In this document: piece by piece, positions 2,480 to 27,383 of the stretch
How positions within the stretch are numbered: position 1 is the first letter of the stretch
Layout: every line of letters begins with the position of its first letter
Source: Macrostomum lignano
Lineage: Eukaryota
Assembly: GCA_002269645.1 (NCBI GenBank)
Contig: NIVC01000032.1
Location: 248,001 to 312,000 of the forward strand
Reading direction: 5' to 3'
Length of the DNA stretch: 64,000 nt
Position numbers and translations under genes: made by a program
The notes under the pieces: model-generated
What the model was told of the DNA's origin: nothing
The model's database searches: none
The model's input: only the letters and a program-made list of their open reading frames with translations

Positions 2480-3278
2480 ATGGAGCATCATAACAATAAC
2501 GTCAACGAAAACAACAACATGCTGGTAAATGTGGACTCCGAGGTTACATTTGAACTTGGCGACGGTGCCAGCGGCAGCGGAGGAAGCCCTAGCGCTGGCA
2601 GTTTACCAATAGCAGCCGCAGTTGACGCCGGCTTTGGCAGTCGTGGCGGCAGCGCCGGCGGCTCAACCCAGGCCACTACTAGTCCTCGGGGTCCACCGCT
2701 AGAATGGAGTACGCCAGTGTCAAATTCGGATAGTTACAATAATAATATTGCCAGTCTTCGTCGACACGGCGCCGGAGGCGGCGGCGGCGGCATGGACAGC
2801 GGGTATCAGACTGATTCACCGCTGATGATGAACACCGCCTTAGCGGCAGCAGCCGCTGGAACATCAACATCTGATCAACAGCAGCAGGAGCAATTTCAAA
2901 TGAGCATGGAAGATTTGCGACTACAATTGCCTAGCCCGCCGCCGCTTCATCATCATCATCAGCAGCAGCCACCGCCTGGCACTTTTAGACCCGTTAGTCC
3001 CCAGCCTGTCATGCTGTCAACGTCTGCTCCAACAATGAGACAGCTGTCGCCTCATCTCGCCTCAGGCTACCATCTGCACTATCAGAATCATCATCATAAT
3101 CAATATTATTATCCATATCGACCGCCGTCTGTACCCATGGCCGATCTGCCAGAGCCAGAAGAGGCAGCAGCAGCAGAAGAAGCAGCAGACCTCGAGGCCC
3201 AGCAAAGCCTTCTCGGCGGCGGCCCAAATTCTGCTGCAGATCGAGAAGTTGCTTACGTTGCTGCCTCCCGTTCGGGTG
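2480..3278 (+). CDS. Candidate BH3-only protein, coding exon 1 (disordered N-terminus, DSGYQT degron)
   Basis: ORF from ATG 2480 with poly-G/Q/H tracts; donor G|GTGAGT at 3278/3279, phase 1, compatible with the next exon. Confidence 0.7.
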
Positions 3279-3799
3279 GTGAGTTATTAAGGTTTCCTGA
3301 TTAATTACTTTCTATTCTAAAAGTACATGAGCACAGGAGAAAGAGCTGACTAGGGGCGGGGTCATTTTATGGCTCTCTAGAAATGCTCACATGTTGATCA
3401 CGTGACATGACGTTAAGACGTTTAACCTCGTGACACGGGGTTTCTTCCTTCTTGCTATCTATATTTCTTAAATTTGTTTGCTTGCACTTTTAATTGAAAG
3501 TCATTTAAACATCTCTATGGCCTGTAGTGTCACAGTGTGGAAATGAGGGGGATGGTCTTGGTCAAGAATTAGGTCAGCTCATGTGTATGATAAGGAAGGA
3601 AGAAAGAAAGGTCACTGAGTGCGTTTTTTTCTTTTATAAACGAATTTTATAAAGTACACCTGGTCTTACATTTAAAGCTTCAGTCTATTGTACTTTTTGT
3701 TTAAATAAAGTTCATAGTGCACTTATTATTATACTTACTCTGAAACAGATAGTGCCATTCTGGTTCTTGCATTCTGGCCTGATACTCTATAGACTCTAC

Positions 3800-5955
3800 T
3801 AAGTCTCATTCTGGCACTGGCACTCCACCCCAGTCTCATTCTGGCACTCCACCCCAGTCTCATTCTGGCACTCCACCCCAGTCTCATTCTGGCACTCCAC
3901 CCCAGTCTCATTCTGGCACTCCACCCCAGTCTCATTCTGGCACTCCACTCCAGTCTCATTCTGGCACTCCACCCAGTCTCATTCTGGCACTCCACCCCAG
4001 TCTCATTCTAGCACTCCACCCCAGTCTCATTCTGGCACTCCACCCCAGTCTCATTCTGGCACTCCACCCCAGTCTCATTCTGGCACTCCACCCCAGTCTC
4101 ATTCTGGCACTCCACCCAGTCTCATTCTGGCTCTCCACCCCAGTCTCATTCTGGCACTCCACCCCAGTCTCATTCTGGCACTCCACCCCAGTCTCATTCT
4201 GGCACTCCACTCCAGTCTCATTCTGGCACTCCACCCAGTCTCATTCTGGCACTCCACCCCAGTCTCATTCTGGCACTCCACCCCAGTCTCATTCTGGCAC
4301 TCCACTCCAGTCTCATTCTGGCACTCCAACCCAGTCTCAATCTGGCACTCCACCCCAGTCTCATTCTGGCTCTCCACCCCAGTCTCATTCTGACACTCCA
4401 CCCCAGTCTCATTCTGGCACTCCACCCCAGTCTCATTCTGGCACTCCACCCCAGTCTCATTCTGGCACTCCACCCCAGTCTCATTCTGGCACTCCACCCC
4501 AGTCTCATTCTGGCACTCCACCCCAGTCTCATTCTGGCACTCCAACCCAGTCTCATTCTGGCACTCCACCCAGTCTCATTCTGGCACTCCACCCCCAGTC
4601 TCATTCTGGCTCTCCACCCCAGTCTCATTCTGGCACTCCACCCCAGTCTCATTCTGGCACTCCACCCCAGTCTCATTCTGGCACTCCACCCCAGTCTCAT
4701 TCTGGCTCTCCACCCCAGTCACATTCTGGCACTCCAACCCAGTCTTATTCTGGCACTCCATCCAGTCTCATTCTGACACTCCACCCAGTCTCATTCTGGC
4801 TCTCCACCCCAGTCTCATTCTGGCACTCCACCCCAGTCTCATTCTGGCACTCCACCCCAGTCTCATTCTGGCTCTCCACCCCAGTCTCATTCTGGCTCTC
4901 CACCCCAGTCTCATTCTGGCTCTCCACCCCAGTCTCATTCTGGCTCTCCACCCCAGTCTCATTCTGGCTCTCCACCTGACCTCAGTCTCATTCTGGCTCT
5001 CCACGGACTTCACCCCAGTCTCATTCTGGCTCTCCACCCCAGTCTTATTCTTGCTCTCCACCCCAGTCTCATTCTGGCTCTCCACCCCAGTCTCATTCTG
5101 GCTCTCCACCCCAGTCTCATTCTGGCTCTCCACCCCAGTCTCATTCTGGCTCTCCACCCCAGTCTCATTCTGGCTCTCCACGGACTCCACCCCAGTCTCA
5201 TTCTGGCTCTCCACGGACTCCACCCCAGTCTCATTTTGGCTCTCCACCCCAGTCTTATTCTTGCTCTCCACCCCAGTCTCATTCTGGCACTCCACCCAGT
5301 CTCATTCTGGCTCTCCACCCCAGTCTCATTCTGGCTCTCCACCCCAGTCTCATTCTGGCTCTCCACCCCAGTCTCATTCTGGCTCTCCACCTCAGTCTCA
5401 TTCTGGCTCTCCACGGACTTCACCCCAGTCTCATTCTGGCTCTCCACGGACTCCACCCCAGTCTCATTCTGGCTCTCCACGGACTCCACCCCAGTCTCAT
5501 TCTGGCTCTCCACCCCAGTCTCATTCTGGCTCTCCACCCCAGTCTCATTCTGGCTCTCCACCCCAGTCTCATTCTGGCTCTCCACGGACTCCACCCCAGT
5601 CTCATTCTGGCTCTCTACCCCAGTCTTATTCTGGCTCTCCACCCCAGTCTCATTCTGGCTCTCCACGGACTCCACCCCAGTCTCATTCTGGCTCTCCACC
5701 CCAGTCTCATTCTGGCTCTCCACCCCAGTCTCATTCTGGCTCTCCACGGACTCCACCCCAGTCTCATTTTGGCTCTCCACCCCAGTCTCATTCTGGCTCT
5801 CCACCCCAGTCTCATTCTGGCACTCCACCCAGTCTCATTCTGGCTCTCCACCCCAGTCTCATTCTGGCACTCCACCCAGTCTCATTCTGGCTCTCCACCC
5901 CAGTCTCATTCTGGCTCTCCACCCCAGTCTCATTCTGGCACTCCACCCCAGTCTG
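3800..5955. repeat. 24-bp minisatellite with 23- and 33-bp variants
   Basis: Unit CTGGCACTCCACCCCAGTCTCATT, drifting to CTGGCTCTCC with a 9-bp insertion (CCACGGACT) in the 3' half. Confidence 0.97.
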
Positions 5956-7732
5956 CCTCTACACCTACAAAAAAGTGGTAATTGAAATTAAGATATCACC
6001 TTAATTCGAGGACACCGCGGTCCGCGGCACCTTTTTTTTGGGGGTGCAAGTTAAATGTTATTGAGCTTTTTTGTTCTCTAATGAGCTAGCCTAACCTGTG
6101 AATAACCTGTATTTATATAGTTACCTAATAAGTAAGATAAGCGGCGTCATTTATAGTTGTCTAGACTTGTTGCCCTGTAAGGTGACCCTAATGACCCTGG
6201 TTGGGACATACTATAAATAGATTTTATCACGTGATTCGGTAGACTATAAACTAAATAATAAGGTTCTTGTTCTGCGTGTGTGTGAGGGTTGGACGCGCCA
6301 GGGGCACAGGGGCAACGTAAAAGGGCGTTAAGCCCTATTACGAGTATCTGACAAGAAAGACCAAAAACAAATATAAATGACGAATACACTACACCCGTAT
6401 AATAGTCATATGCCAGCCCTGTCACTCAGTTTACTCTGTCTGTCTGACCGGTTTGCCAGGTTCTAATTTTAGTCATTCTTTTTGTGGCCTAGAAATGCGT
6501 CTAGTCTAAAAACGTCTCTTAGATTATGGCTACTAGGGCTGCTTTTCATCGTTGATTATTTTCGATTTCGAAATATAATTGCTTGCTTGCTTACGGAGTT
6601 TTAGTTCATCTGCACCGGTTGAGTGTTTATCGCCTCTCCTCTGACCCTGACTAACTTATTCCTTACATCCAAGTCCTAAGTCCTAACTAATCTGTTTAAA
6701 TGTTTTTGCCTTTTTATCTTAAAAGTAAACGATGATCCTTTAATAATAGTTACGGACGGCGTGTTTAAGACTTTATTCTGTTCTTTGATTTTTGTTCAAA
6801 GAAATAGCCGCCCGCCGCCGCCGCCCACCGCCCCATAAAAGATCTAACAAATTCACACGCCGTACATTAGCGCTGTCTGTTTTGGTGTGAAAATTTGCCC
6901 GGCCCGGCTGTGGGGGATTGAGGTCGGAAAGGGGTGGCTATCGTATCTATTTTATTTTACCCCGCCCCCCGCCCCAACCCCCCGTCTAGCCCTGACCCTA
7001 TTAGGTCACGTGACAATTTAATTGTCTCCGCGTTCCCATTCCCACGACAGACGACGCGTCGCCTCGACGACACACTTAATTATCCGTGGATTAGAAATTT
7101 GTGATGTGATCGCGATCGCCGCCTATTTGTCATCTTGTCCTTGTTTGTCTGTCCTGTCGTTCATTGTAGGAAGTATTATTATTTATTATTATTGTCAAAA
7201 CAAATTTAGTTTTTTTTCGTAATGTGTACAAGTCTGTGTACAGGTTTTAAATTTTAATGTGGTGGTTTGTAATGTAAATGAGCCCCTTCTGAGCTGACGC
7301 ACTTTTATGTATGGGCCTCTGTTGAAAATAAGATGATTCAGTAGTGTGAATGAAAAAACCACTAAGGATGCACCGTCTCCCATCATGATTCCAGACATCT
7401 GGAGCGTATCCATGAATGATTTTTTAACTTAAAAGTGGGGATATCGATTGGTGAGTCTTTTGCCCCCTTCCTCCACCCCCTGGCTACGTCGTTGTGCCGT
7501 GTGTTTGTTGGGTACTGACAGATTAATAATTACACTTGATTATGTCATCATTTTTAGTCAATTAGGGCCGCGCTCTCTTTGCCCGCTGTTTTGTAATTTT
7601 CATTTTACACGTGTAAATTTTCACCTAACAAGGCAAAGCACAGGTCAGTTTTTTAAGGACAATGTTGTTATCCGCTGGGGTCACGTTTAGAATCCATGTT
7701 AGAATGGGTTCTTATAATCTTTTTGCGTAGTT

Positions 7733-8650
7733 TCTCGGAATCTAATGGGGTGTCAGATCTCGGAATCTAAAGGGGGTGTCAGATCTCGGAATCTAAAGGG
7801 GTGTGTCAGATCTCGGAATCTAAAGGGGGTGTCAGATCTCGGAATCTAAAGGGGGTGTCAGATCTCGGAATCTAATGGGGTGTCAGATCTCGGAATCTAA
7901 TGGGGTGTCAGACCTCGGAATCTAATGGTGTCAGATCTCGGAATCTAAAGGGGTGTCAGATCTCGGAATCTAATGGGGTGTCAGACCTCGGAATCTAATG
8001 GTGTCAGATCTCGGAATCTAATGGGATGTGTCAGATCTCGGAATCTAATGGGGTGTCAGATCTCGGAATCTAATGGGGTGTGTCAGATCTCGGAATCTAA
8101 TGGGGTGTCAGATCTCGAAATCTAATGGGGTGTGTCAGATCTCTGAATCTAATGGGGTGTCAGATCTCGGAATCTGATGGGGTGTGTCAGATCTCGGAAT
8201 CTAATGGAGTGTGTCAGATCTCGGAATCTAATGGGGTGTCAGATCTCGAAATCTAATGGGGTGTGTCAGATCTCGGAATCTAATGAGGGTATCAGATCTC
8301 GGAATCTAAAGGGGTGTCAGATCTCGGAATCTAAAGGGGGTGTCAGATCTCGGAATCTAATGGAGTGTCAGATCTCAGAATCTAAAGGGGTGTCAGATCT
8401 CGGAATCTAATGGGGTATGTCAGACCTCGGAATCTAATGGTATGTCAGACCTCGGAATCTAATGGTGTGTCAGATCTCGGAATCTAATGGGTTGTCAGAT
8501 CTTGGAATCTACAGGGGGTGTCAGATTTTGGAATCTAATGGGGTGTCAGATTTTGGAATCTAATGGGGTGTCAGATTTTGGAATCTAATGGGGTGTCAGA
8601 TTTTGGAATCTAATGGGGTGTCAGATCTGGGAATCTAATAGTGTTGTCAG
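7733..8650. repeat. ~25-bp minisatellite
   Basis: Unit GATCTCGGAATCTAATGGGGTGTCA, 24-27 bp variants. Confidence 0.95.
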
Positions 8651-9395
8651 AACCTAATAAATTAATTAAAACGTTTCCTCAAGGCCTTGCCGACACCAAA
8701 AACGCTAAACAGACAAGCACTACGCAAACACTACGCTACTATGTACATTTAGTTAGTAGTAGTCAAACTGGTTGTTCTATATTTAGCTAGGTCCAGTTTA
8801 ACGTCATCAGGTTGAGTTTATTGCAAGATAGATAGAATTCACCGCGCACCCGGGCTCCGAGTGCGGCTGCTTGCCCCTGGATGAATCCAGGGCCCAGGGG
8901 TATTAGCGAAAGCCATAACTATATTTGAAATTTGTGGACAAGCGTTGAAGGTTATACTTTACACCCCCAGCCCTAACCCCAACCTGCTGTTAACAAACCT
9001 TTGTTTAGAAACTTTTTAAAATTCAAGAATCTTAATAAAACTATGAAAAAAATGATTGAATAAGTATGAAAATTTATTATTAATATCAAGTATAGATTCT
9101 TTATATAATAAAGCTAATTTTCTATTTTTAATCTCTCCCCCCTTTCTCTCTCTCTTGGTAGGCAGCAGGTCTCTCTTGACCACTCGTGGCCAGTGGCGCC
9201 ACCCTTTACTTTTATTTCTGTCTCAAAATGAACATTTATTGGACATTGTGCCAATTTAAGAAATTTTCTTTTCTATCCACTCTTTTCGCTCTCTTCTTCC
9301 TTTCCGCGCATGTGTATATATAAATGTTGTGTCTCACATGCGGGACTGACTGGGCAGGTGGATTAGGTTAAAAACAGCCTGCTGTGTATCATTAG

Positions 9396-9527
9396 CAATG
9401 CCGTCTCAGCATCAACAAGTCATATTTGGCTTGGAATCATCAGATTCGGAAGCTGACGATGCGGATGACGTATTCGAACAGTCGACTTCTAATGGAGATA
9501 ATTATAGCGAATCTTTGTTGTCAGCTT
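9396..9527 (+). CDS. Candidate BH3-only protein, coding exon 2 (acidic, Ser-rich)
   Basis: Acceptor ATTAG|CA at 9395/9396 (alternative AAACAG| at 9377/9378, same phase); donor T|GTAAGT at 9527/9528; phase 1 in and out; AMPSQHQQVIFGLESSDSEADDADDVFEQ... Confidence 0.6.
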
Positions 9528-9664
9528 GTAAGTTTTTTGTCTTCAATTTATTGATAGGTCTTATTGATAGGTCTTATTGATTGTCTTCAATTTATTTTAT
9601 AGTATTAACTAAATAACCTTGTCTAATAGGGGTAGCTGGGCATAATCTACGGTCTAAGTCACGT

Positions 9665-12600
9665 GGAGTGCCATTTTCTAGTTTGGGGAGTGCCATTTTC
9701 CAGTTTGGGGAGTGCCATTTATTAGTTTAGGGAGTGCCATTTTCCAGTTTGGGGAGTGGCATTTTCCAGTTTAGGGAGTGCCATTTTCCAGTTTGGGGAG
9801 TGCCATTTTCCAGTTTGGGGAGTGCCATTTATTAGTTTAGGGAGTGCCATTTTCCAGTTTGGGGAGTGCCATTTTCCAGTTTAGGGAGTGCCATTTTCCA
9901 GTTTGGGGAGTGCCATTTTCCAGTTTGGGGAGTGCCATTTATTAGTTTAGGGAGTGCCATTTTCCAGTTTGGGGAGTGCCATTTTCCAGTTTGGGGAGTG
10001 CCATTTTCCAGTTTAAGGGAGTGCCATTTTCCAGTTTGGGGAGTGCCATTTTCCAGTTTAGGGAGTGCCCTTTTCCAGTTTGGGGAGTGCCATTTTCCAG
10101 TTTAAAGAAGTGCCATTTTCCAGTTTGGGGAGTGCCATTTTCCAGTTTAAGGGAGTGCCATTTTCCAGTTTGGGTAGTGCCATTTTCCAGTTTAAGGGAG
10201 TGCCATTTTCCAGTTTGGGGAGTGCCATTTTCTAGTTTGGGGAGTGCCATTTTCCAGTTTGGGGAGTGCCATTTTCTAGTTTGGGGAGTGCCATTTTCTA
10301 GTTTGGGGAGTGCCATTTTCCAGTTTAAGGAAGTGCCATTTTCCAGTTTGGGGAGTGCCATTTTCCAGTTTAAGGGAGTGCCATTTTCCAGTTTAAGGGA
10401 GTGCCATTTTCCAGTTTGGGGAGTGCCATTTTCCAGTTTAGGGAGTGCCCTTTTCCAGTTTGGGGAGTGCCATTTTCCAGTTTAAGGAAGTGCCCTTTTC
10501 CAGTTTGGGGAGTGCCATTTTCCAGTTTAAGGAAGTGCCATTTTCCAGTTTGGGGAGTGCCATTTTACAGTTTAAGGGAGTGCCATTTTCCAGTTTGGGG
10601 AGTGCCATTTTCCAGTTTAAGGAAGTGCCATTTTCCAGTTTGGGGAGTGCCATTTTCCAGTTTAAGGGAGTGCCATTTTCCAGTTTGGGGAGTGCCATTT
10701 TCCAGTTTAAGGGAGTGCCCTTTTCCAGTTTAGGGAGTGCCATTTTCCAGTTTAAGGAAGTGCCATTTTCCAGTTTGGGGAGTGCCATTTTCCAGTTTAA
10801 GGAAGTGCCATTTTCCAGTTTGGGGAGTGCCATTTTCCAGTTTAAGGGAGTGCCCTTTTCCAGTTTAGGGAGTGCCATTTTCTAGTTTAAGGAAGTGCCA
10901 TTTTCCAGTTTGGGGAGTGCCATTTACCAGTTTGGGGAGTGCCATTTTCCAGTTTAAGGGAGTGCCATTTTCCAGTTTGGGTAGTGCCATTTTCCAGTTT
11001 AAGGGAGTGCCATTTTCCAGTTTAGGGAGTGCCCTTTTCCAGTTTAGGGAGTGCCATATTCCAGTTTAAGGAAGTGCCATTTTCCAGTTTGGGGAGTGCC
11101 ATTTTCTAGTTTGGGGAGTGCCATATTCCAGTTTAAGGAAGTGCCATTTTCTAGTTTGGGGAGTGCCATTTTCTAGTTTGGGGAGTGCCATTTTCCAGTT
11201 TAAGGAAGTGCCATTTTCCAGTTTGGAGAGTGCCATTTATTAGTTTGGGGAGTGCTAATTATTAGTTTGGGGAGTGCCATTTTCCAGTTTGGGGAGTGCC
11301 ATTTTCTAGTTTGGGGAGTGCCATTTTCTAGTTTGGGGAGTGCCATTTTCCAGTTTAAGGGAGTGCCATTTTCCAGTTTGGGGAGTGCCATTTTCCAGTT
11401 TAAGGAAGTGCCATTTTCCAGTTTGGGTAGTGCCATTTTCCAGTTTAAGGGAGTGCCATTTTCCAGTTTAGGGAGTGCCCTTTTCCAGTTTAGGGAGTGC
11501 CATATTCCAGTTTAAGGAAGTGCCATTTTCCAGTTTGGGGAGTGCCATTTTCTAGTTTGGGGAGTGCCATATTCCAGTTTAAGGAAGTGCCATTTTCTAG
11601 TTTGGGGAGTGCCATTTTCTAGTTTGGGGAGTGCCATTTTCCAGTTTAAGGAAGTGCCATTTTCCAGTTTGGAGAGTGCCATTTATTAGTTTGGGGAGTG
11701 CTAATTATTAGTTTGGGGAGTGCCATTTTCCAGTTTGGGGAGTGCCATTTTCTAGTTTGGGGAGTGCCATTTTCTAGTTTGGGGAGTGCCATTGTCTAGT
11801 TTGTGGAGTGCCATTTTCCAGTTTGGGGAGTGCCATTTTCCAGTTTAAGGAAGTGCCATTTTCCAGTTTGGGGAGTGCCATTTTCCAGTTTTAGGGAGTG
11901 CCCTTTTCCAGTTTGGGGAGTGCCATTTTCCAGTTTAAGGGAGTGCCATTTTCCAGTTTAGGGAGTGCCCTTTTCCAGTTTAGGGAGTGCCATATTCCAG
12001 TTTAAGGAAGTGCCATTTTCCAGTTTGGGGAGTGCCATTTTCTAGTTTGGGGAGTGCCATATTCCAGTTTAAGGAAGTGCCATTTTCTAGTTTGGGGAGT
12101 GCCATTTTCTAGTTTGGGGAGTGCCATTTTCCAGTTTAAGGAAGTGCCATTTTCCAGTTTGGAGAGTGCCATTTATTAGTTTGGGGAGTGCTAATTATTA
12201 GTTTGGGGAGTGCCATTTTCCAGTTTGGGGAGTGCCATTTTCTAGTTTGGGGAGTGCCATTTTCTAGTTTGGGGAGTGCCATTGTCTAGTTTGTGGAGTG
12301 CCATTTTCCAGTTTGGGGAGTGCCATTTTCCAGTTTAAGGAAGTGCCATTTTCCAGTTTGGGGAGTGCCATTTTCCAGTTTAAGGGAGTGCCATTTTCCA
12401 GTTTGGGGAGTGCCATTTTCCAGTTTAAGGGAGTGCCATTTTCCAGTTTGGGGAGTGCCATTTTCCAGTTTAAGGAAGTGCCATTTTCCAGTTTGGGGAG
12501 TGCCATTTTCCAGTTTAAGGAAGTGCCATTTTCCAGTTTGGGGAGTGCCATTTTCCAGTTTAAGGGAGTGCCCTTTTCCAGTTTAGGGAGTGCCATTTTC

Positions 12601-17278: not shown

Positions 17279-18029
17279 AATTGCTACCAGATCACACTGG
17301 TTCTAGAGCTTATATCTCCATGAGTAAGCAGAGTAAGTACCATTGTCTATAGCGTCTGTTTGTATAAGCAGTGAGCACAAAGGCAGGCAGACTCATAAAT
17401 GCTTTGAATAAATTTCAGCTAGAAGCAGGTGTCACTCTGGGGTCGTCTCCGGTCACGTGATTAAAACAGAGAAGCGAAGCAAAGTTGACAGGAGCGTCTT
17501 TGTTTTAACTCCCCTGACCCTTCATTTAAAAGCGTTGCGGGTTGTTAAAATTCTTTACCTCAAGGGCCTGCTAAACAATCCAGCTCATGGCTGCGGGCCA
17601 GTTGAGGGAGGAGAGGAATAGAGGAGAGAGAGAAGATTAGAGGTAAAAGGAGAGAAGAAATGAGAGAAAGGAGAGAGGGGGAATTTCGAAATGCAGACAC
17701 AGAAAGCCAGACTGAGACGTAGTTATAATTCCTAAACAGTGAGCGGCCTATAGTTTTGTCCAACGTGCCGAATAGCAATGTTTGTTTTAACAGTGTAGTA
17801 AAGCTTTTATCTATCTTGGGTTCTACTATATCGTGACCTTGACATGGTTATAACTGCGACATTGTTTATAACAATTATTATGCCTGATGTTTGTTAATTT
17901 TTGGGCGATAGATAGTAGGATTCTGAGTTTTTAAGGATAAATTTGACCCCAATCAATGGATGATAAGATAAGGTGACCGCGATAAAAATGTGACCTCTCG
18001 TTTATGGCTCCCGAGATGTGATCTCGATT

Positions 18030-18712
18030 GGTTTTAGGAAATTGCATCAATTGAAATCTAAGAAAATGATCCAAATAGATTCTAAGAAATAATCCAAATC
18101 GATTCTAAGAAAATGATCCAAATAAATTCTTAGAAATAACCCAAATCGATTCTAAGAAAATGATCCAAATAGATTCCTAGAAATAATCCAAATCGATTCT
18201 AAGAAAATGATCCAAATAGATTCTTAGAAATAACCCAAATCGATTCTAAGAAAATGATCCAAATAGATTCCTAGAAATAATCCAAATCGATTCTAAGAAA
18301 ATGATCCAAATAGATTCTTAGAAATAACCCAAATCGATTCTAAGAAATTTCACCAATCGGATTCTAAGAAAATGACCCCAATCGCCTCTAAGAAATTGCA
18401 TCAATTAAAATCTAAGAAATGACCCCAATCGATTCTAAGAAATTTCACCAATCGGATTCTAAGAAATTGCGTTATCAAATTCACAGAAATGATCCCAATC
18501 AATTCCAAGAAATGATCCCAATCAATTCCAAGAAATGATCCCGATCAATTCCAAGAAATGATCCCGATCGATTCCAAGAAATGATCCCGATCGATTCCAG
18601 GAAATGACCCTAATCGATTCCAAGAAATGACCCTAATCAATTCCAAGAAATAATCCCGATCGATTCCAAGAAATAATTCCGATCGATTCCAAGAAATGAT
18701 CCCAATCAGTTG
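18030..18712. repeat. 23/24-bp minisatellite
   Basis: Units AAGAAAATGATCCAAATAGATTCT and AAGAAATGATCCCGATCGATTCC. Confidence 0.93.
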
Positions 18713-18853
18713 AAGGAAAAACCTCAATATGTTTGAATAAATGACATTAATGTAATATTCTCTAATAGATTCCAAAGATGAATTATTAATAAATACCTGC
18801 TATGGATTTCTTGATTAATTCATTCCCCACCTACATCCCCCCATTCTGCTCAG

Positions 18854-19089
18854 CCCGCAGTCTTGTCAACCAGCGGGAGCCGCTGCCAGACCTTCTACTG
18901 GAGACCACCGTAGTTGACATCCGGGTCCGCAGCCAGTCTGTGCCAGTGATGCCCGAAGATGCTCAACAGTTGCGCCTGCAGATGCGACGCGAAGAGAGCG
19001 TCGAAATGGTTGCTATGAGACTTCGAAGCATTGGTGACGAGATTGATAGCAGCAGGTCGTCTGTGCAAAATCGCAGCGAAGTTCTCGTG
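18854..19089 (+). CDS. Candidate BH3-only protein, coding exon 3 (14-3-3/Akt motif and BH3 motif)
   Basis: Acceptor CTGCTCAG| at 18853/18854 (phase 1); donor GTG|GTAAGT at 19089/19090 (phase 0); encodes RVRSQSVP (18922-18945) and VAMRLRSIGDEID (19009-19047), which aligns without gaps to Bim IAQELRRIGDEFN. Confidence 0.8.
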
Positions 19090-19149
19090 GTAAGTTTTTT
19101 TAGATCTAAAAAATTATAATCATTTCTCTCCTTTAGTATGATTGTATTC

Positions 19150-19455
19150 TGAGGTCTATTTTAGTAGCTTAGTTTAGCCTGATGTCTATTTTAGTTTAGC
19201 CTGAGGACCATTTTAGTTTAGCCTGAGGACCATTTTAGTTTAGCCTGAGGACCATTTTAGTTTAGCCTGAGGTCCATTTTAGTTTAGTCTGAAGTCCATT
19301 TTAGTCCAGCCTGAGCCCTGAGGTCCAATTTAGTTTAGCCTGAGCCCCGAGGTCCATTTTAGTTTACCCTGAAGTTCATTTTAGTTTAGCTTGAGGTTCA
19401 TTTTAGGTTACTTGGGGTTCATTTTAGTTCACCCTGAGGCTTATTTTAGTTTAGC
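19150..19455. repeat. 22-bp minisatellite
   Basis: Unit TTTTAGTTTAGCCTGAGGACCA. Confidence 0.9.
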
Positions 19456-19844
19456 CTGGCACTAGTATAGCGTGACTAAAATCAATTTTAGAATCCTGAA
19501 ATAAAAGGTCCGGTTTTGAGTACAGTGCACTCAACTATCAGTTGCTAAGGCTGAATTGTTATCAAAACAGGCCCTGTAGGTCTTTGTCTCAACTCGTACT
19601 TAGTTGTGTTTATTATTATTAGAATATTGCTCCAGCTCAAGGTCATTTGAAGGTCATCGTCTCAAATGCCCTCACATGCCTCCACGATTCGTTGCTTCTT
19701 AAGTGCAATAATAATAATCGTAAAACAGGAAATAAAAAGCTCTCATCAACTAGAGTCTGCTTTTAGTATCCAGGGCCCAAAATAGTATCTAGGGCTTTCA
19801 TATTCTAGAAGGATAACTTAAAATCCTCTTCTATAGATCAGGCA

Positions 19845-21461
19845 TGAGATTATCCGAATCTTCTCTCACCCTGAGACAGGAGTGATATTATCAGAATCTT
19901 CTCACCCTGAGACAGAAGTGAGATTATCAGAATCTTCTCTCACCCTGAGACATGAGTGAGATTATCAGAATCTTCTCTCACCCTGAGACAGAAGTGAGAT
20001 TATCAGAATCTTCTCTCACCCTGAGACAGGAGTGAGATTATCAGAATCTTCTCTCACCCTGAGAGAGGAGTGAGATTATCAGAATCTTCTCTCACCCTGA
20101 GACAGGAGTGAGATTATCAGAATCTTCTCTCACCCTGAGACAGGAGTGAGATTATCATAATCTTCTACTCACCATTAGACATGAGTGAGATTATCAGAAT
20201 CTTCTCTCACCCTGAGAGAGGAGTGAGATTATCAGAATATTCTCTCACCCTGAGACAGGAGTGAGATTATCAGAATCTTCTCTCACCCTGAGACAGGAGT
20301 GAGATTATCATAATCTTCTACTCACCATGAGACAGGAGTGAGATTATCAGAATCTTCTACTCACTATGAGACATAAGTGAGATTATCATAATCTTCTACT
20401 CACCATGAGACAGGAGTGAGATTATCAGAATCTTCTCTCACCCTAAGACAGGAGTGAGATTATCAGAATCTTCTCTCACCCTAAGACAGGAGTGAGATTA
20501 TCAGAATCTTCTCTCACCCTAAGACAGGAGTGAGATTATCAGAATCTTCTCACCCTGAGACAGGAGTGAGATTATCAGAATCTTCTCTCACCCTGAGAGA
20601 GGAGTGAGATTATCAGAATCTTCTCTCACCCTGAGACAGGAGTGAGATTATCATAATCTTCTACTCACCATGAGACAGGAGTGAGATTATCAGAATCTTC
20701 TACTCACTATGAGACATAAGTGAGATTATCAGAATCTTCTACTCACCATGAGACAGGAGTGAGATTATCAGAATCTTCTCTCACCCTGAGAGAGGAGTGA
20801 GATTATCATAATCTTCTACTCACCATGAGACAGGAGTGAGATTATCAGAATCTTCTACTCACTATGAGACATAAGTGAGATTATCAGAATCTTCTACTCA
20901 CCATGAGACATGAGTGAGATTATCAGAATCTTCTCTCACCCTGAGACAGGAGTGAGATTATCAGAATCTTCTCTCACCCTGAGACAGGAGTGAGATTATC
21001 AGAATCTTCTCTCACCCTGAGAGAGGAGTGAGATTATCAGAATCTTCCACTCACCATGAGACATGAGTGAGATTATCAGAATCTTCTCTCACCCTGAGAC
21101 AGGAGTGAGATTATCAGAATCTTCTCTCACCCTGAGACAGGAGTGAGATTATCAGAATCTTCTCTCACCCTGAGAGAGGAGTGAGATTATCAGAATCTTC
21201 CACTCACCATGAGACATGAGTGAGATTATCAGAATCTTCTCTCACCCTGAGACAGGAGTGAGATTATCAGAATCTTCTCTCACCCTGAGACAGGAGTGAG
21301 ATTATCAGAATCTTCTCTCACCCTGAGAGAGGAGTGAGATTATCAGAATCTTCTCTCACCATGAGACATAAGTGAGATTATCAGAATCTTCTACTCACCA
21401 TTAGACATGAGTGAGATTATCAGAATCTTCTACTCACCATTAGACATGAGTGAGATTATCT
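19845..21461. repeat. 38-bp minisatellite with internal inverted repeats
   Basis: Unit GAGATTATCAGAATCTTCTCTCACCCTGAGACAGGAGT, ~42 copies, contiguous without spacers. Confidence 0.97.
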
Positions 21462-22089
21462 AAACATAAAGAACGGTGCTGTAATAACACTGACCTATTT
21501 GGTCAGAATTCGGAGTTTCCTGCTACAATAGTGTTTATTGAATGGTGAGGCTGACATACACGAAGTTGCTTTAATAAAGATGCGAAAGATGACAACGTTA
21601 CACAGTATGCGTCACAGCTCCTCTTCCCCTTGCCAAACTAAAGCTGACCCTGTCATGCATGTCACGGTCACGTGCCAATGCCTGGATTTAGTTTAATTCT
21701 TTGCAATATTAATCTTGACTATATTAATACTGAATACTTTTTTATGAAGTGATTGCGGCAGTTGTGTATACTCGTATTATGATTGGGTTGCTATGCCGAG
21801 AGAGAGAGGGGAGATAGCTACTGGACTGGCCCTGTTTTTATGAATGAGCGATTGGGAAGAGAGGGAGGGGTGGTAGGAGAGAGAGGAGCGAGAGGAGGGT
21901 TCGCGCCCACCCCCTCACCTCTCCAGCGCCTCAGCAGCGAGCCACGTGACTTTGTTTTATACTCGGTATTTATAAAAATAATGCTTTATTACAAGTGCTC
22001 AAGGTAAAAACCGGGGGGGGGGGGTTGGTTTAATATTGCCTTTGTTTGTCCCACCCCTCAAATTTCCTACAGGTTCTAAACTTTACCAG

Positions 22090-22300
22090 ACTTGAGATGC
22101 GGCACATCTGAAGGCTGCGTACGGCTGTTCAGTCCAAGGACTGGGGGGTCACCACACACACCTTCAATTACCCCAGCTAATGCTGGCACCCATGCAGTTT
22201 ATAGCTGAGTGAACTGAAGCAATGCAGAGTTAAGGTGTCTTGCTCAAGGACACAAATTGTTCCTTAGTGGGTCGAGAATCGAACCCCCGACCGACCTTCT
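22090..22300 (-). mobile_element. tRNA-derived CORE-type SINE, 5'-truncated
   Basis: Minus strand reads GGTTCGATTCTC (B box), then GTGTCCTTGAGCAAGACACCTTAACTCTGCATTGCTTCAGTTCACTCAGCTATAAA, resembling the CORE domain; no A box seen. Confidence 0.7.
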
Positions 22301-22721
22301 AAGAAACTAGAAGTTTCACGTACTTTTTTAGTTAATCAAGAACACGTATAAAAAGACATGCGGTATCGGGGATTCTATGTGTGACATTGGGGAGTTCATT
22401 CGGTGCAACATTGTGGTGGTTTTTCGTGCAGGAAAGGGGAGTGGGAGAGGGAGATAAACCGCCCGCCCACTATTTTTCTCCCAATGCATGACTGACCTTC
22501 CTTTGCTCCTTCATTGTCATTGGCTGGTTTTTATTCCATATGTGGGCTGGTTGGACTGAAGTCAGCTGACCCAAAGTATTTCGTAGCTTATAGAATTAAA
22601 TAGCATGGCTTCTTTTCTTAGACTTATGAATAAACAAGTTCCTAGCGTCCTTTATTAATTATTGAATTCTTGATTACGGCTATTGTGACATTAATATTTA
22701 TCATATTTTTATCTGAAGACA

Positions 22722-25112
22722 CTGAGAATAAACTCTAGCAGTGATTGGTGACACACTGGGGACTCTAGCAGTGATTGGTGACACACTGGGTACTCTAGCA
22801 GTGATTGGTGACACACTGGGTACTCTAGCAGTGATTGGTGACACACTGGATACTCTAGCAGTGATTGGTGACACACTGGGTACTCTAGCAGTGATTGGTG
22901 ACACATTGGACACTCTAACAGTGATTGGTGACACACTGGGTACTCTAGCAGTGATTGGTGACACACTGGATACTCTAGCAGTGATTGGTGACACACTGGG
23001 TACTCTAGCAGTGATTGGTGACACACTGGGTACTCTAGCAGTGATTGGTGACACACTGGGTACTCTAGCAGTGATTGGTGACACACTGGATACTCTAGCA
23101 GTGATTGGTGACACACTGGGTACTCTAGCAGTGATTGGTGACACACTGGGTACTCTAGCAGTGATTGGTGACACACTGGATACTCTAGCAGTGATTGGTG
23201 ACACACTGGGTACTCTAGCAGTGATTGGTGACACACTGGGTACTCTAGCAGTGATTGGTGACACACTGGGTACTCTAGCAGTGATTGGTGACACACTGGA
23301 TACTCTAGCAGTGATTGGTGACACACTGGGTACTCTAGCAGTGATTGGTGACACACTGGGTACTCTAGCAGTGATTGGTGACACACTGGGTACTCTAGCA
23401 GTGATTGGTGACACACTGGGTACTCTAGCAATGATTGGTGACACACTGGGTACTCTAGCAGTGATTGGTGACACACTGGGTACTCTAGCAGTGATTGGTG
23501 ACACACTGGGTACTCTAGCAGTGATTGGTGACACACTGGGTACTCTAGCAGTGATTGGTGACACACTGGGTACTCTAGCAGTGATTGGTGACACACTGGG
23601 TACTCTAGCAGTGATTGGTGACACACTGGGTACTCTAGCAGTGATTGGTGACACACTGGGTACTCTAGCAGTGATTGGTGACACACTGGGTACTCTAGCA
23701 GTGATTGGTGACACACTGGGTACTCTAGCAGTGATTGGTGACACACTGGGTACTCTAGCAGTGATTGGTGACACACTGGGTACTCTAGCAGTGATTGGTG
23801 ACACACTGGGTACTCTAGCAGTGATTGGTGACACACTGGATACTCTAGCAGTTATGGGTGACACACTGGGTACTCTAGCAGTGATTGGTGACACACTGGG
23901 TACTCTAGCAATGATTGGTGACACACTGGGTACTCTAGCAGTGATTGGTGACACACTGGGTACTCTAGCAGTGATTGGTGACACACTGGGTACTCTAGCA
24001 GTGATTGGTGACACACTGGGTACTCTAGCAGTGATTGGTGACACACTGGATACTCTAGCAGTTATGGGTGACACACTGGGTACTCTAGCAGTGATTGGTG
24101 ACACACTGGGTACTCTAGCAATGATTGGTGACACACTGGGTACTCTAGCAGTGATTGGTGACACACTGGATACTCTAGCAGTGATTGGTGACACACTGGG
24201 TACTCTAGCAGTGATTGGTGACACACTGGGTACTCTAGCAGTGATTGGTGACACACTGGATACTCTAGCAGTGATTGGTGACACACTGGGTACTCTAGCA
24301 GTGATTGGTGACACACTGGGTACTCTAGCAGTGATTGGTGACACACTGGATACTCTAGCAGTGATTGGTGACACACTGGGTACTCTAGCAGTGATTGGTG
24401 ACACACTGGATACTCTAGCAGTGATTGGTGACACACTGGGGACTCTAGCAGTGATTGGTGACACACTGGGTACTCTAGCAGTGATTGGTGACACACTGGA
24501 TACTCTAGCAGTGATTGTGACACACTGGGTACTCTAGCAGTGATTGGTGACACACTGGGTACTCTAGCAGTGATTGGTGACACACTGGGTACTCTAGCAG
24601 TGATTGGTGACACACTGGGTACTCTAGCAGTGATTGGTGACACACTGGGTACTCTAGCAGTGATTGTGACACACTGGGTACTCTAGCAGTGATTGGTGAC
24701 ACACTGGGTACTCTAGCAGTGATTGGTGACACACTGGGTACTCTAGCAGTGATTGGTGACACACTGGGTACTCTAGCAGTGATTGGTGACACACTGGGTA
24801 CTCTAGCAATGATTGGTGACACACTGGGTACTCTAGCAGTGATTGGTGACACACTGGGTACTCTAGCAGTGATTGGTGACACACTGGGTACTCTAGCAGT
24901 GATTGGTGACACACTGGGTACTCTAGCAGTGATTGGTGACACACTGGGTACTCTAGCAGTGATTGGTGACACACTGGGTACTCTAGCAGTGATTGGTGAC
25001 ACACTGGGTACTCTAGCAGTGATTGGTGACACACTGGGTACTCTAGCAGTGATTGGTGACACACTGGGTACTCTAGCAGTGATTGGTGACACACTGGGTA
25101 CTCTAGCAGTGA
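22722..25112. repeat. 30-bp minisatellite (~79 highly homogeneous copies)
   Basis: Unit GTGATTGGTGACACACTGGGTACTCTAGCA; two 29-bp units cause the frame shifts in the ORF track. Confidence 0.98.
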
Positions 25113-26046
25113 TTAAGTTGGCTCGCTAAAAAAATTCATACCCGTGACCAACGCGTAGTTCTGTATATTCTTGCTTCTAAATTAAATAACAAAATGTTTT
25201 TTGTATAAACGAACGCATAATGTATATTTGGCGTCTCAATTGTTGATCTTAGCTAAGATGACTGACTGTGCTTGGCCCCTGGACAAAAGCGTGTGTGTTT
25301 GCGCTGGAAACAGCAGCTAAGCTGGGTGTCATGTCGTTTGCCCGGTCTCCCCTCTTCGCGACATGGCGTCAGGGTCTATTTTTGGAAATGGCCTTTTTTG
25401 ACAATTTTCGTTTGCATATACGCGAATGCATAGTATAGCCAGACCTAAATGGTCCTGGTCTCTAAACTCTTCACGTGGTATATCTTATAGTTATTTAAGT
25501 CACCTGATTCTAAGTATCTGCGCTTCAAATCTGTAGTGAGACTGATGATTTTTAACACTGCGCAAGTCAAGTGCAATGGAAGTCTACCCTCGGGCACACG
25601 GCGCACGGGTCCAATACGTGTTGGTTAAATCTGTTAAAGCTTCTATAGAGTGCTTTGATAAATCTTAACTCGTGACTTTAGTGCAAAATTCTTACCTGGA
25701 AATGCAATTTTTTAATCTACTTCCACCTCTGGACCCTGGCGATAAGATATGCCTAATAGTGCGTTATGAAATTGCATATGATACTACTTGCCTTGTATTG
25801 TATAAGTAATAAAAAAGAAACATGAATTTTTAATTAACAATTTTTTTGTGAATCTGTTGCGGGCTTTATACAGATAAAAGTTTGTGAATCTGTTTAAATT
25901 TTGTTTCTGTGTACGAAAATAAGAGCCTTGTATAACTTTTACGAGTATTTTCGGGCTTCATTTTTTAGTCCAGCCTCTACATTTATGCTCCTTCGTCACT
26001 CTCTCATTGTCACTCTCTCACTCTCACGCTCACTCTCCCATTCTCC

Positions 26047-26820
26047 TGAAGAGTTTATTGGGTGGTGATCAGTCACTCAATAACTCCCACTTCTAGACAC
26101 TGGGGAACAAGTGCCTAGGTATAAACAAAATCGAATAACTCTTACTGCAGCGGATCCTCTTGAGGTTGGTAGTCGGCTGTTGTCTCTTGGAGACCTTAAC
26201 TTTATCTGTGGGTCGACCAAAACGAGAGCGAATCAGAATTCTTGACGGTCCTCGAGCTCGGAATTCACAATAGAACGTGCGCCCTTATGAACAATTGAAT
26301 TCTTTAAATCTCTGTAGTAGGTCCTCCTGAAGGGCGTCTTCTTCGTTACGTCCGAAACGTAACGAATAACTCAAATCAACTCAATAAATCCTCTAGGAAT
26401 GTATCCTAGGAAACAAGGAGGCCTTTCTCAAATGTGTCGACAATAAGTGGCTCTCGTAAACTCAATTAATCAAATTATTAGTGCTAAAGCAAAGAACTAA
26501 ATTGGGTAACGCTTACCAATCTGTCCGGATTTCTTCTCTCAGAGATGGATCTTCTTGGTTAACGTAATCCAAAGTCTTCCTTGAGACCGCTCCGAGTCTG
26601 AATTTTTGACTCGGTTTTCGATTTTATTTATAGTAAATTTTTGGTGAAAAACTGGTTTAAAATCTGTTATTTACTTAGTTCACGTATGTTTGATTAAGAG
26701 GTCATGAATGTTTGATCATTACCGAATATGGAATTAAACAAATACAACTCCCGAGAACCGGTTTCTTGATCAAATAAACGTCGGTCCTACGTAGGGCTCT
26801 GAGTCACTTGTGTTTTCACC
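26047..26820 (-). mobile_element. Possible solo LTR or TE fragment
   Basis: Complex sequence between two CTCA-rich tracts; on the minus strand a TATA-like CTATAAATAAAA (~26625) precedes AATAAACTCTTCA ending in CA at 26047. No TSD confirmed. Confidence 0.25.
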
Positions 26821-27068
26821 TGACTCATTCTAAAAATAGAATTTCTAAAAATAGATATGACTCATCATGACTCATTTTAAAAATTGATTGCGAGTTTAAA
26901 TTAATTTTATTAGAATATTACCCTTAAGTAGTGCATTACGGTATGACTAACGGCTCTCTACACTCCCACTCTTTCTCTAACTCTCACTCACTGTCTCATT
27001 CTCACTCTCACTCTCACTCTCCCACTCTTACTCTCACTCTCACTCACTCCCTCGCTATGCAGTTCCAG

Positions 27069-27209
27069 CGTCTGCGCGGTTACTCGGTGAGCGAGGCGGA
27101 GCGCCAGGGTCACTCATCTGGCGACGGCGCCGGCGCCGTTGGAGGCGGCAGCGCCTCGTCGTACCCGGGCGATCCAATGTCGCACTTCATGCACGACCGT
27201 CGCCAGTCT

Positions 27210-27246
<37 letters not shown>

Positions 27247-27383
27247 GTCAGTCGTGGCTCGGCCGAGCCCTGTACACCCTCTCCGGCGCTGGAATTTCCA
27301 GCGAAGAGGCCGAAGAAGATGGCCATGCTGATGCGGATCGAGACGATTATAGTCGGGGATTCGATGGCGGCGAGATGGACTGA
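27069..27383 (+). CDS. Candidate BH3-only protein, terminal coding exon
   Basis: Pyrimidine-rich tract, then tandem phase-0 acceptors (ATGCAG| 27062/27063 or TTCCAG| 27068/27069); RLRGYS, RRQS twice, poly-Q, stop TGA 27381-27383. The four exons sum to 1482 nt (494 codons). Confidence 0.65.

What the first reader, a model, noticed from the sequence alone, without database searches (positions are those of the whole stretch)
2480..27383. Candidate invertebrate BH3-only protein hidden across 25 kb of repeat-filled introns
Seen: four exons with canonical splice sites and consistent phases (1,1,0) join into a ~493-aa, largely disordered ORF. Exon 3 encodes V-A-M-R-L-R-S-I-G-D-E-I, an ungapped match to Bim I-A-Q-E-L-R-R-I-G-D-E-F (four hydrophobic positions, the G-D pair). 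No BH1/BH2 region and no C-terminal membrane anchor are visible (the C-terminus is acidic). Established: BH3-only proteins share little beyond this motif, so homology searches often miss them, and few are characterised in flatworms. Inference: a cytosolic trigger or sensitiser of mitochondrial apoptosis.
Basis: partly seen in the sequence, partly recalled or inferred. Interest (0 to 1): 0.8.

Follow-up and report, generated by a model that had tools for sequence, protein, structure and literature searches.

The report
Candidate BH3-only gene in Macrostomum

Summary
The motif VAMRLRSIGDEI is at window 19009-19044 (+), inside an exon with canonical splice sites (18854-19089). The window is Macrostomum lignano contig NIVC01000032.1. 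The gene is already annotated from RNA-seq-based models as hypothetical protein BOX15_Mlig023455g1 (PAA93152.1).

The four-exon chain is not supported. The gene therefore gives two three-exon isoforms: 451 aa from 2480, and 228 aa from 9398. Both share the BH3 exon and the last exon (27063-27383).

The coding sequence is under purifying selection against a paralogue (dN/dS 0.21). No homologue exists outside M. lignano, in an exhaustive search of 1.84 billion representative proteins. There is no Pfam domain, Bcl-2 fold or membrane anchor.

The motif meets every sequence criterion for a BH3. Its best PDB matches are BH3 peptides solved in Bcl-2-family grooves (PXT1, Bim, Bax). However, about 20 equally good matches are expected by chance in a proteome-sized random set, and binding was not tested.

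An Akt/14-3-3-type site (RVRSQSVP) lies 28 residues upstream, as in BAD. I put BH3-only function at about 0.45.

The parts
2480..3278 (+). Alternative 5' coding exon E1a (long isoform). It runs from ATG 2480 for 266 codons plus 1 base, with donor GTGAGT in phase 1. It encodes a low-complexity N/G/A/Q/H/P-rich extension.
   Evidence: The same exon and junction are used in the annotated paralogue protein P0001. dN/dS against L001 is 0.19, p=3e-5. It is not part of any annotated model at this locus itself.
9315..9325 (+). TATA-like element TATATATAAAT, about 40 nt upstream of the annotated 5' end of E1b. It is the putative internal promoter for the short isoform.
   Evidence: Sequence read; invariant in all three paralogous loci. 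Its function as a promoter is inferred, not shown.
9362..9527 (+). Alternative first exon E1b (short isoform). The annotated 5' end is 9362, the ATG is at 9398, it has 43 codons plus 1 base, and the donor is GTAAGT in phase 1. It encodes the acidic leader MPSQHQQVIFGLESSDSEADDADDVFEQSTSNGDNYSESLLSA.
   Evidence: P0002 (PAA93152.1) maps here at 100% identity. ATG, frame and donor are conserved in L001 and L002. Indels upstream of the ATG break the frame, and the AG at 9394-9395 is lost in L002.
18854..19089 (+). Common exon E2 (79 codons; phase 1 in, phase 0 out). It encodes LPDLLLETTVVDI, the RVRSQSVP site and the BH3-like helix.
   Evidence: It is present in both annotated isoforms. dN/dS 0.18.
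18922..18945 (+). RVRSQSVP (long-isoform residues 290-297). It matches the basophilic-kinase (Akt-type) RxRxxS motif and the mode-1 14-3-3 RSxSxP motif. The putative phospho-acceptor is S295 (S72 in the short isoform).
   Evidence: Sequence. RxRxxSxP occurs in 1.8% of shuffles of the protein. It is identical in the paralogue. BLASTP aligns it with BAD RGRSRSAP, but not significantly. Function is inferred.
19009..19044 (+). BH3-like core VAMRLRSIGDEI (long-isoform residues 319-330). HP1 is V319, HP2 L323, HP3 I326, then G327, D328 (AC1) and HP4 I330. Acidic flanks are EE upstream and D331 downstream.
   Evidence: It lies in one of the two most amphipathic 18-residue segments of the protein (the other starts at residue 264) and is predicted helical by AF2 at low confidence. 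The only paralogue difference is S325H at an exposed position.
27063..27383 (+). Last coding exon E3 (106 codons plus stop TGA). It contains a Gly/Ser-rich stretch, a Q11 run, RRQSW and an acidic C-terminal tail. There is no membrane anchor.
   Evidence: It is the same in P0001 and P0002.
3279..18853 (+). Intron 1 of the long isoform. It contains E1b and minisatellite arrays at 3802-5954, 7733-8651, 9665-13133, 13824-14851, 15265-15910, 16513-17277 and 18057-18707.
   Evidence: It is colinear with L001 at 87-94% identity.
19090..27062 (+). Intron 2, with minisatellite arrays at 19169-19458, 19845-21460 and 22732-25114.
   Evidence: This intron is shorter (4.8 kb) in paralogue L001.

Best explanation
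The locus is a genuine Macrostomum lignano gene (BOX15_Mlig023455g1; paralogues Mlig026279g1 and g2).

Shown:
- Two alternative first exons (ATG 2480 or ATG 9398) are joined to two common exons. This gives a 451-aa and a 228-aa protein.
- Both proteins are acidic, lack lysine and cysteine entirely, have no known domain and are predicted mostly disordered.
- The common exon carries a canonical BH3 motif.

Inferred (most likely mechanism): the protein is a lineage-specific BH3-only protein. The segment EESVEMVAMRLRSIGDEIDS folds into an amphipathic helix on binding. It inserts V319, L323, I326 and I330 into the hydrophobic groove of a flatworm Bcl-2-like or Bak-like protein, and D328 pairs with the conserved BH1 arginine. 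This would neutralise pro-survival proteins or activate Bak, promoting cytochrome c release.

More speculative: phosphorylation of S295 in RVRSQSVP by an Akt-type kinase, followed by 14-3-3 capture, would hold the protein inactive, as with vertebrate BAD. The two promoters would provide separate transcriptional inputs.
For: The gene is real:
- Transcript-derived annotation covers all junctions used here (PMC5730564).
- Splice sites are canonical and conserved in three loci.
- dN/dS is 0.21, p=1e-6.

The motif is BH3-like:
- It is an exact match to a PROSITE-type BH3 pattern, the only one in the six-frame window (0.025 expected).
- Its PSSM score of 15.2 bits is in the middle of the leave-one-out range of 17 known BH3s, equal to BIK and above BAX, BID, MCL1, NOXA and BAD.
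- A profile search of the PDB returns BH3 ligands as 5 of the 6 best hits: PXT1 BH3 (E 8e-5, 12/19 identical), a Bim-derived peptide, Bax BH3 and the DM2 peptide. 7wjh is the Bcl-xL complex.

The context fits the class (criteria in PMC8998228; PMC9171138):
- The BH3 lies on one exon that is present in both isoforms.
- There is no Bcl-2 domain.
- 78% of residues are polar or disorder-promoting, and AF2 mean pLDDT is 43 with a helix over the motif.
- The only paralogue substitution in the core is at the solvent-exposed HP2+2 position.
- RxRxxSxP lies 28 residues upstream of HP2.

Flatworms have Bak, Bcl-2-like proteins and, in schistosomes, BH3-only proteins.
Against: - All support for function is at motif level.
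- 22 windows score at least as well as the candidate in 25 million random residues. A BH3 HMM gives E=1.2 against 60,000 decoy proteins.
- Reviews state that BH3 patterns have little predictive value (PMC9171138).
- No orthologue outside M. lignano was found. Conservation of the motif over real evolutionary distance is therefore untested; the paralogues differ by only dS of about 0.08.
- There is no significant similarity to BAD, Bim or any Pfam BH3-only family.
- The presence of Bcl-2-family partners in M. lignano itself was not checked here.
- The AF2 model is low-confidence.
- The candidate was picked because it matched Bim, so there is selection bias.
Confidence: 0.45

Rival explanations
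1. Chance BH3-like motif. The gene is a real, fast-evolving, intrinsically disordered orphan protein with some unrelated role, for example a signalling scaffold, a transcriptional co-regulator or a 14-3-3 client. The BH3 pattern is then a coincidental amphipathic helix that binds no Bcl-2-family protein.
For: - False-positive rate at proteome scale: 22 windows at or above the candidate score per 25 million random residues, and HMM E=1.2 in 60,000 decoys.
- The literature warns that BH3 consensus patterns give many false positives.
- No homologue and no domain anchor any function.
- The long isoform has a 266-aa Q/H/N/G/A-rich extension more typical of nuclear low-complexity proteins.
Against: - The match goes beyond the minimal L...GD pattern: all four hydrophobic positions, a small residue at HP1+1, and acidic flanks. 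It is 12/19 identical to the PXT1 BH3.
- The best PDB neighbours are almost only BH3 ligands.
- Chance hits should mostly fall in folded helical proteins. Here the motif lies in one of the two most amphipathic segments of a hydrophobic-poor disordered protein, and in the exon shared by both isoforms.
Confidence: 0.4
2. A functional BH3-like motif with a non-apoptotic role. The helix binds a Bcl-2-family groove, or another helix-binding groove, to regulate something else such as autophagy, mitochondrial dynamics or germ-cell biology. BH3-containing proteins such as Beclin-1 work this way.
For: - The closest solved BH3 is that of PXT1, not a classical BH3-only protein.
- The protein is longer and more complex than classical BH3-only proteins, and it has two promoters.
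Against: Nothing specific in the sequence points to autophagy or another pathway. There is no other recognisable domain or motif family.
Confidence: 0.1
3. Not a functional protein-coding gene: an annotation artefact or a decaying duplicate among repeats.
For: - The locus sits in minisatellite-rich DNA.
- The model at this locus is flagged 'partial'.
- E1a is not annotated at this locus.
Against: - All exons are intact in three loci, with conserved splice sites and only in-frame indels.
- dN/dS is 0.21 with p=1e-6.
- The gene models are transcript-based.
Confidence: 0.03

Closest known systems
Vertebrate BAD (BH3-only sensitiser regulated by Akt/PKA phosphorylation and 14-3-3)
   Same: - Disordered, with no membrane anchor.
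- The BH3 is preceded by an RxRxxSxP site: candidate RVRSQSVP against BAD RGRSRSAP and IRSRHSSYP.
- An RRQS-W element follows the BH3, loosely like BAD MRQSSSW.
- The predicted logic is the same: a survival kinase switches the BH3 off through 14-3-3.
   Different: - No detectable homology: Pfam Bcl-2_BAD gives no hit, and BLASTP gives E=0.11 with the BH3s misaligned.
- The candidate keeps the canonical Gly-Asp, where BAD has Ser-Asp with the regulatory S155.
- Spacing from the site to HP2 is 28 residues, against 15 or 39 in BAD.
- The BAD sequence and site numbering are from my own memory.
Bim, Bik and Bax BH3 motifs
   Same: The core is 7/12 identical to Bim, 7/12 to Bik and 5/12 to Bax, sharing IGDE[IL]DS with Bax. 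All HP1-HP4 positions and the G-D pair match.
   Different: - No similarity outside the motif.
- No LC8-binding TQT motif as in Bim or Bmf.
- No C-terminal tail anchor as in Bim or Bik.
- No Bcl-2 fold as in Bax.
PXT1 BH3 (PDB 7wjh with Bcl-xL; 8gsv)
   Same: It is the best match in the whole PDB. EEIIHKLAMQLRHIGDNID aligns with EESVEMVAMRLR[S/H]IGDEID at 12/19 identity, profile E 8e-5.
   Different: The similarity is confined to the 19-residue motif. PXT1 is a small protein named as a peroxisomal testis-specific protein. The resemblance is convergence at motif level, not shared descent.
Schistosome BH3-only proteins (sjC and its S. mansoni counterpart; Lee et al. 2011, PNAS 108:6999)
   Same: Same phylum and the same proposed role: a BH3-only ligand in a three-part Bcl-2 pathway with Bak-like and Bcl-2-like partners.
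   Different: - The exhaustive search found no protein other than the gene itself at E<=0.001, so there is no detectable relationship.
- The paper itself was not held, so I could not compare the sequences directly.
- Reviews report that the schistosome proteins likewise find no homologues in other lineages.
Echinoderm and cnidarian candidate BH3-only proteins (PMC8998228)
   Same: They were nominated on the same criteria: a BH3 on a single exon, a substantially disordered sequence, lengths up to 350-373 residues, and no experimental confirmation.
   Different: Those candidates were found by BLAST with human Bim, Bad or Bmf. This one has no detectable similarity to them beyond the motif.

Membership tests
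BH3-only proteins (functional class) | BH3 motif: four hydrophobic positions HP1-HP4 spaced i, i+4, i+7, i+11, with Leu at HP2 and an acidic AC1 (Asp) preceded by a small residue (Gly) | tested here: met
   V319, L323, I326, G327, D328 and I330. Exact match to a PROSITE-type pattern. PSSM 15.2 bits, mid-range of known BH3s. PDB neighbours are BH3 ligands. Definition from PMC9171138.
BH3-only proteins (functional class) | No BH1, BH2 or BH4 motif and no Bcl-2 fold | tested here: met
   No Pfam family at E<=10. The AF2 model has no globular fold.
BH3-only proteins (functional class) | Intrinsically disordered when free, with the BH3 as a locally helix-prone amphipathic segment | tested here: inconclusive
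   78% polar or disorder-promoting residues, and the motif region has the second-highest helical hydrophobic moment. AF2 pLDDT is 43 with a helix at 105-121 of P0002. No dedicated disorder predictor was available.
BH3-only proteins (functional class) | BH3 encoded on a single exon | tested here: met
   The motif at 19009-19044 lies wholly within exon 18854-19089. Criterion as used in PMC8998228.
BH3-only proteins (functional class) | BH3-dependent binding to the groove of a multi-motif Bcl-2-family protein of the same organism | not testable with these tools
No complex prediction or binding assay was possible.
BH3-only proteins (functional class) | Pro-apoptotic activity that depends on the BH3 | not testable with these tools
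   Needs experiment.
BH3-only proteins (functional class) | Cognate Bcl-2-like and Bak-like proteins present in the same genome | not tested
   Reported for triclads, trematodes and cestodes (PMC11463336; PMC7022251). M. lignano itself was not examined. The word-index search was judged unlikely to surface such distant homologues.
BAD family (Pfam Bcl-2_BAD) | Sequence homology to BAD | tested here: not met
   No Pfam hit. BLASTP against human BAD gives E=0.11 with the BH3s misaligned.
BAD family (Pfam Bcl-2_BAD) | Basophilic-kinase and 14-3-3 site(s) N-terminal to the BH3 | tested here: met
   RVRSQSVP matches both RxRxxS and RSxSxP; 1.8% of shuffles contain RxRxxSxP. This is a motif match only; phosphorylation was not tested.
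BAD family (Pfam Bcl-2_BAD) | Regulatory serine in the BH3 at the position of the usual Gly (RRMSDEF) | tested here: not met
   The candidate has G327-D328.
Bim/Bmf | Homology to the Bim families, and a dynein light-chain-binding [KR]xTQT motif | tested here: not met
   No Pfam hit. No TQT in either isoform.
Schistosome sjC-type BH3-only proteins | Detectable sequence homology | tested here: not met
   Exhaustive phmmer of the C-terminal 237 aa against 1.84 billion representatives returned only the gene itself. Caveat: I assume, but did not verify, that sjC is in that library.

The most novel reading that the evidence does not exclude
The gene encodes a BAD-like sensor in an early-branching, regeneration-competent flatworm. 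It would be a lysine-free BH3-only protein whose BH3 is switched off by Akt-type phosphorylation of S295 and 14-3-3 capture. Its two promoters would give separate stress and developmental inputs. That would make kinase and 14-3-3 gating of a BH3 either ancient in bilaterians or convergently re-invented. It would also give Macrostomum, which has transgenesis, a genetic handle on stem-cell and tissue-turnover apoptosis.
Probability: 0.15. Interest if true: 0.7.

Novelty: new member of a known kind. Interest (0 to 1): 0.45.

Why it matters
BH3-only proteins are the upstream sensors of mitochondrial apoptosis, but they evolve so fast that homology searches rarely find them outside vertebrates. [quoted passage not shown]

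A validated BH3-only protein in Macrostomum lignano would have three consequences:
- It would extend the three-part Bcl-2 pathway to an early-branching free-living flatworm.
- It would allow tests of how cell death is coupled to neoblast-driven turnover, regeneration and irradiation responses, because M. lignano is transparent, regenerating and transgenic (PMC5730564).
- If the 14-3-3 site is functional, it would bear on whether BAD-type survival-kinase gating is ancestral or convergent.

If the motif proves inert, the locus is just one more orphan disordered protein, and a useful example of how weak BH3 pattern matches are as predictors.

Tried and rejected
1. Homology. Three searches each returned only M. 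lignano copies:
   - word-index search with the full 451-aa model (saturated by low-complexity words);
   - word-index search with 176 aa of exons 2-3 with the Q-run trimmed;
   - exhaustive phmmer of the C-terminal 237 aa against 1.84 billion representatives.
   There is therefore no cross-species conservation test.
2. Pfam gave nothing at E<=10.
3. BAD homology was not significant: BLASTP E=0.11 with the BH3s misaligned. I rejected membership and kept only the motif-level analogy.
4. AF2 of the short isoform without an alignment gave mean pLDDT 43. It is useful only for the helix over the motif. No fold search was run on so poor a model.
5. Transcription-factor sites that drive mammalian BH3-only genes were absent:
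   - no full p53 response element anywhere in the window, and only 4 half-sites (one search failed on pattern syntax);
   - FOXO TTGTTTAC occurs only at 29074 and 29665, at chance level.
6. In-phase AG acceptors exist at 9378 and 9396. The paralogue comparison shows frame-breaking indels and loss of the AG, and the transcript model starts upstream of them.
7. Literature:
   - the gene identifiers Mlig023455 and Mlig026279 occur in no held paper;
   - Lee et al. 2011 is not held, so the schistosome sjC sequence could not be compared directly.
8. Not done:
   - The last word-index protein search was not spent looking for M. lignano Bcl-2 or Bak homologues. Distant homologues rarely share enough exact 5-mers to surface among thousands of vertebrate hits.

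Full report
**What is there**

The window is eukaryotic DNA at 46% G+C. The 12-residue motif VAMRLRSIGDEI is encoded once, at 19009-19044 on the + strand. It sits in a 108-codon open frame. That frame has a polypyrimidine/AG acceptor at 18853|18854 and a GTAAGT donor at 19089|19090.

An ATG-initiated open frame starts at 2480 and ends at a GTGAGT donor after 3278, in phase 1. A terminal exon starts after TGCAG at 27063 and ends with TGA at 27383. Joining these three pieces gives a 1356-nt, 451-codon ORF.

**Identity of the locus**

- The 451-aa model matches hypothetical protein BOX15_Mlig026279g1/g2 of Macrostomum lignano at 94% identity over 100% of its length (P0001, 445 aa; PAA49021.1 and PAA73904.1). 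The exon-exon junctions are identical...SRSG|ARSL... and ...SEVLV|FQRL....
- P0001 is encoded at two near-identical loci of assembly GCA_002269645.1 (L001, L002). They have the same three-exon layout across 21 kb and the same splice-site sequences.
- An exhaustive phmmer search returned one further protein, P0002 (PAA93152.1, BOX15_Mlig023455g1, 'partial', 240 aa).
- The last 185 residues of P0002 are identical to the window's exons 18854-19089 and 27063-27383. Its first 55 residues map at 100% identity to window 9362-9526.
- Its gene lies on contig NIVC01000032.1 and spans 18,022 bp, exactly window 9362-27383. The window is therefore that contig.
- The GenBank annotation of this assembly comes from a genome-guided RNA-seq transcriptome (PMC5730564). 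The junctions are therefore transcript-supported.

**Correcting the exon model**

It is not an internal exon in any annotated model.
- In the paralogues, E1a is joined directly to the BH3 exon.
- At this locus the transcript starts at or before 9362 and uses an ATG at 9398.

Comparison of the three loci supports this.
- From the ATG to the donor, the sequence is conserved and only an in-frame 15-nt insertion occurs.
- Upstream of the ATG there are 1-nt indels.
- The AG that would give the best in-phase acceptor (exon start 9396) is CG in L002.
- A TATATATAAAT element at 9315-9325 is invariant in all three loci.

The gene therefore has two alternative first exons. E1a contributes 266 aa and is low-complexity. 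E1b contributes 43 aa and is acidic. Both end in phase 1 and join two common exons, giving isoforms of 451 and 228 aa.

**Is it a real coding gene?**

Against L001, synonymous divergence is 0.080 and non-synonymous divergence 0.017 (omega 0.21; Fisher p=1e-6).

| Exon | omega |
|---|---|
| E1a | 0.19 |
| BH3 exon | 0.18 |
| Last exon | 0.40 |

Introns are colinear between the loci at 83-94% identity. Ten minisatellite arrays make up about 59% of the introns, in line with the repeat-rich genome described in PMC5730564.

**The protein**

- No Pfam family matches at E<=10.
- No relative exists outside M. lignano in 1.84 billion representative proteins or in the 5.8-billion-protein word-index search.
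- There is no transmembrane-like segment (best 19-residue hydropathy mean 0.72), and the C-terminus is acidic.
- 78% of residues are polar or disorder-promoting.
- AF2 without an alignment gives mean pLDDT 43. It predicts a helix over EESVEMVAMRLRSIGDE and another over the Q-run and RRQSWLGRALYTL.
- Both isoforms and the paralogue contain no lysine and no cysteine, against 21-34 arginines.

**How BH3-like is the motif?**

It satisfies the structural definition of a BH3 (PMC9171138): HP1 V319, HP2 L323, HP3 I326, G327, AC1 D328, HP4 I330.

For the motif:
- It matches a PROSITE-type BH3 pattern (written from memory) exactly. This is the only match in the six-frame window, against 0.025 expected in shuffles, and 1.75e-4 per shuffle of the protein.
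- In a PSSM built from 17 known BH3 segments (written from memory), it scores 15.2 bits. That is the middle of their leave-one-out range.
- Searching all PDB sequences with the region returns BH3 ligands first. With a two-paralogue profile, the PXT1 BH3 gives E 8e-5 at 12/19 identity. A Bim-derived peptide, the Bax BH3 and the DM2 peptide follow, making 5 of the 6 hits. 7wjh is the Bcl-xL complex.

Against over-reading it:
- 22 windows in 25 million random residues score as high.
- A BH3 HMM ranks the candidate level with the two best of 60,000 decoys, at E=1.2.
- The field regards BH3 patterns as poor predictors.
- The candidate was picked for this match in the first place.

**Context that raises the odds**

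- The motif is on one exon, and that exon is the one shared by both isoforms.
- It lies in one of the two most amphipathic segments of a hydrophobic-poor, domain-free protein, whereas chance matches should mostly fall in folded helical domains.
- The only paralogue change in the core (S325H) is at the exposed HP2+2 position, where known BH3s vary.
- Twenty-eight residues upstream of HP2 lies RVRSQSVP. It matches both the Akt-type RxRxxS motif and the mode-1 14-3-3 motif RSxSxP (1.8% of shuffles contain RxRxxSxP). This recalls BAD's RGRSRSAP and IRSRHSSYP (from memory), although BAD homology is not detectable.

Weighing perhaps 0.5-2 true BH3-only genes that would pass this score against about 0.5-1 chance hits expected in the orphan, disordered fraction of a proteome, I put BH3-only function at roughly 0.45. 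A chance motif is at about 0.4.

**Comparison with known systems**

Functionally, the proposal is a BH3-only ligand of the flatworm Bcl-2/Bak system. That system is documented in schistosomes and planarians. The candidate is not a detectable member of the Bim, Bad, Bik or schistosome sjC sequence families. This is normal for the class, which is regarded as polyphyletic. It is best filed as a new, unvalidated member of a known kind.

**What remains untested**

- Whether M. lignano has the partner proteins.
- Binding or complex prediction.
- Phosphorylation and 14-3-3 binding.
- Any phenotype.
- Conservation in other Macrostomum species.

No paper in the held library mentions the gene identifiers.

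Noticed in passing
window 2480-3278, 9398-9527, 18854-19089, 27063-27383 (and P0001): The protein has no lysine and no cysteine in either isoform or in the paralogue (0 K against 21-34 R in 228-451 residues). The chance of this is about 1e-6 even at a 3% lysine frequency. A lysine-free protein cannot be ubiquitylated on internal lysines, which could matter for its turnover.
   Followed up: partly
window 19036-19050 (residues 328-332, DEID|S): The end of the BH3 reads DEID-S, a DExD-type executioner-caspase consensus that overlaps HP4. Bax has the analogous DELD-S. It may be a by-product of the BH3 consensus or a cleavage site. YQTD-S at residues 109-113 of the long isoform is another candidate site.
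   Followed up: no
window 9315-9325: A TATA-like TATATATAAAT lies about 40 nt upstream of the annotated 5' end of the alternative first exon. It is invariant in all three paralogous loci, which suggests an internal promoter.
   Followed up: partly
window 3802-25114 (ten arrays): The introns hold long minisatellite arrays with periods of 20-38 nt and up to 155 copies (for example 9665-13133 with period 22, and 22732-25114 with period 30 at 97% match). They create many spurious long open frames on both strands.
   Followed up: partly
window 30999-32738 (-) and 42869-44818 (-): Two paralogous long ORFs of 580 and 650 aa have similar Cys-rich N-termini (CIICDQ...CHMC), a coiled-coil-like middle and an NHL repeat at the C-terminal end (Pfam NHL, E 2e-7 and 1.5e-5). 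They look like first exons of duplicated TRIM-NHL-like genes.
   Followed up: partly
window 33928-34980 (-): An EF-hand protein (Pfam EF-hand_7, E 2e-24; annotated as 338 aa) whose N-terminal half is a tandem QQENKDS-type repeat.
   Followed up: partly
window 35870-38913 (-) and 40707-41234 (+): Fragments of non-LTR retrotransposons. Reverse-transcriptase pieces (RVT_1, E 5e-21) are split over different frames, and a zf-RVT piece lies in the G+C-rich stretch 36-42 kb. They appear to be decayed copies.
   Followed up: partly
L001/L002 versus window: There are three loci for this gene in the assembly: two near-identical ones, plus this one at dS of about 0.08. This is consistent with the duplicated chromosomes of the DV1 line. 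The long isoform is annotated only at the L001/L002 pair and the short isoform only here, possibly because transcripts were assigned to their best-matching paralogue.
   Followed up: partly
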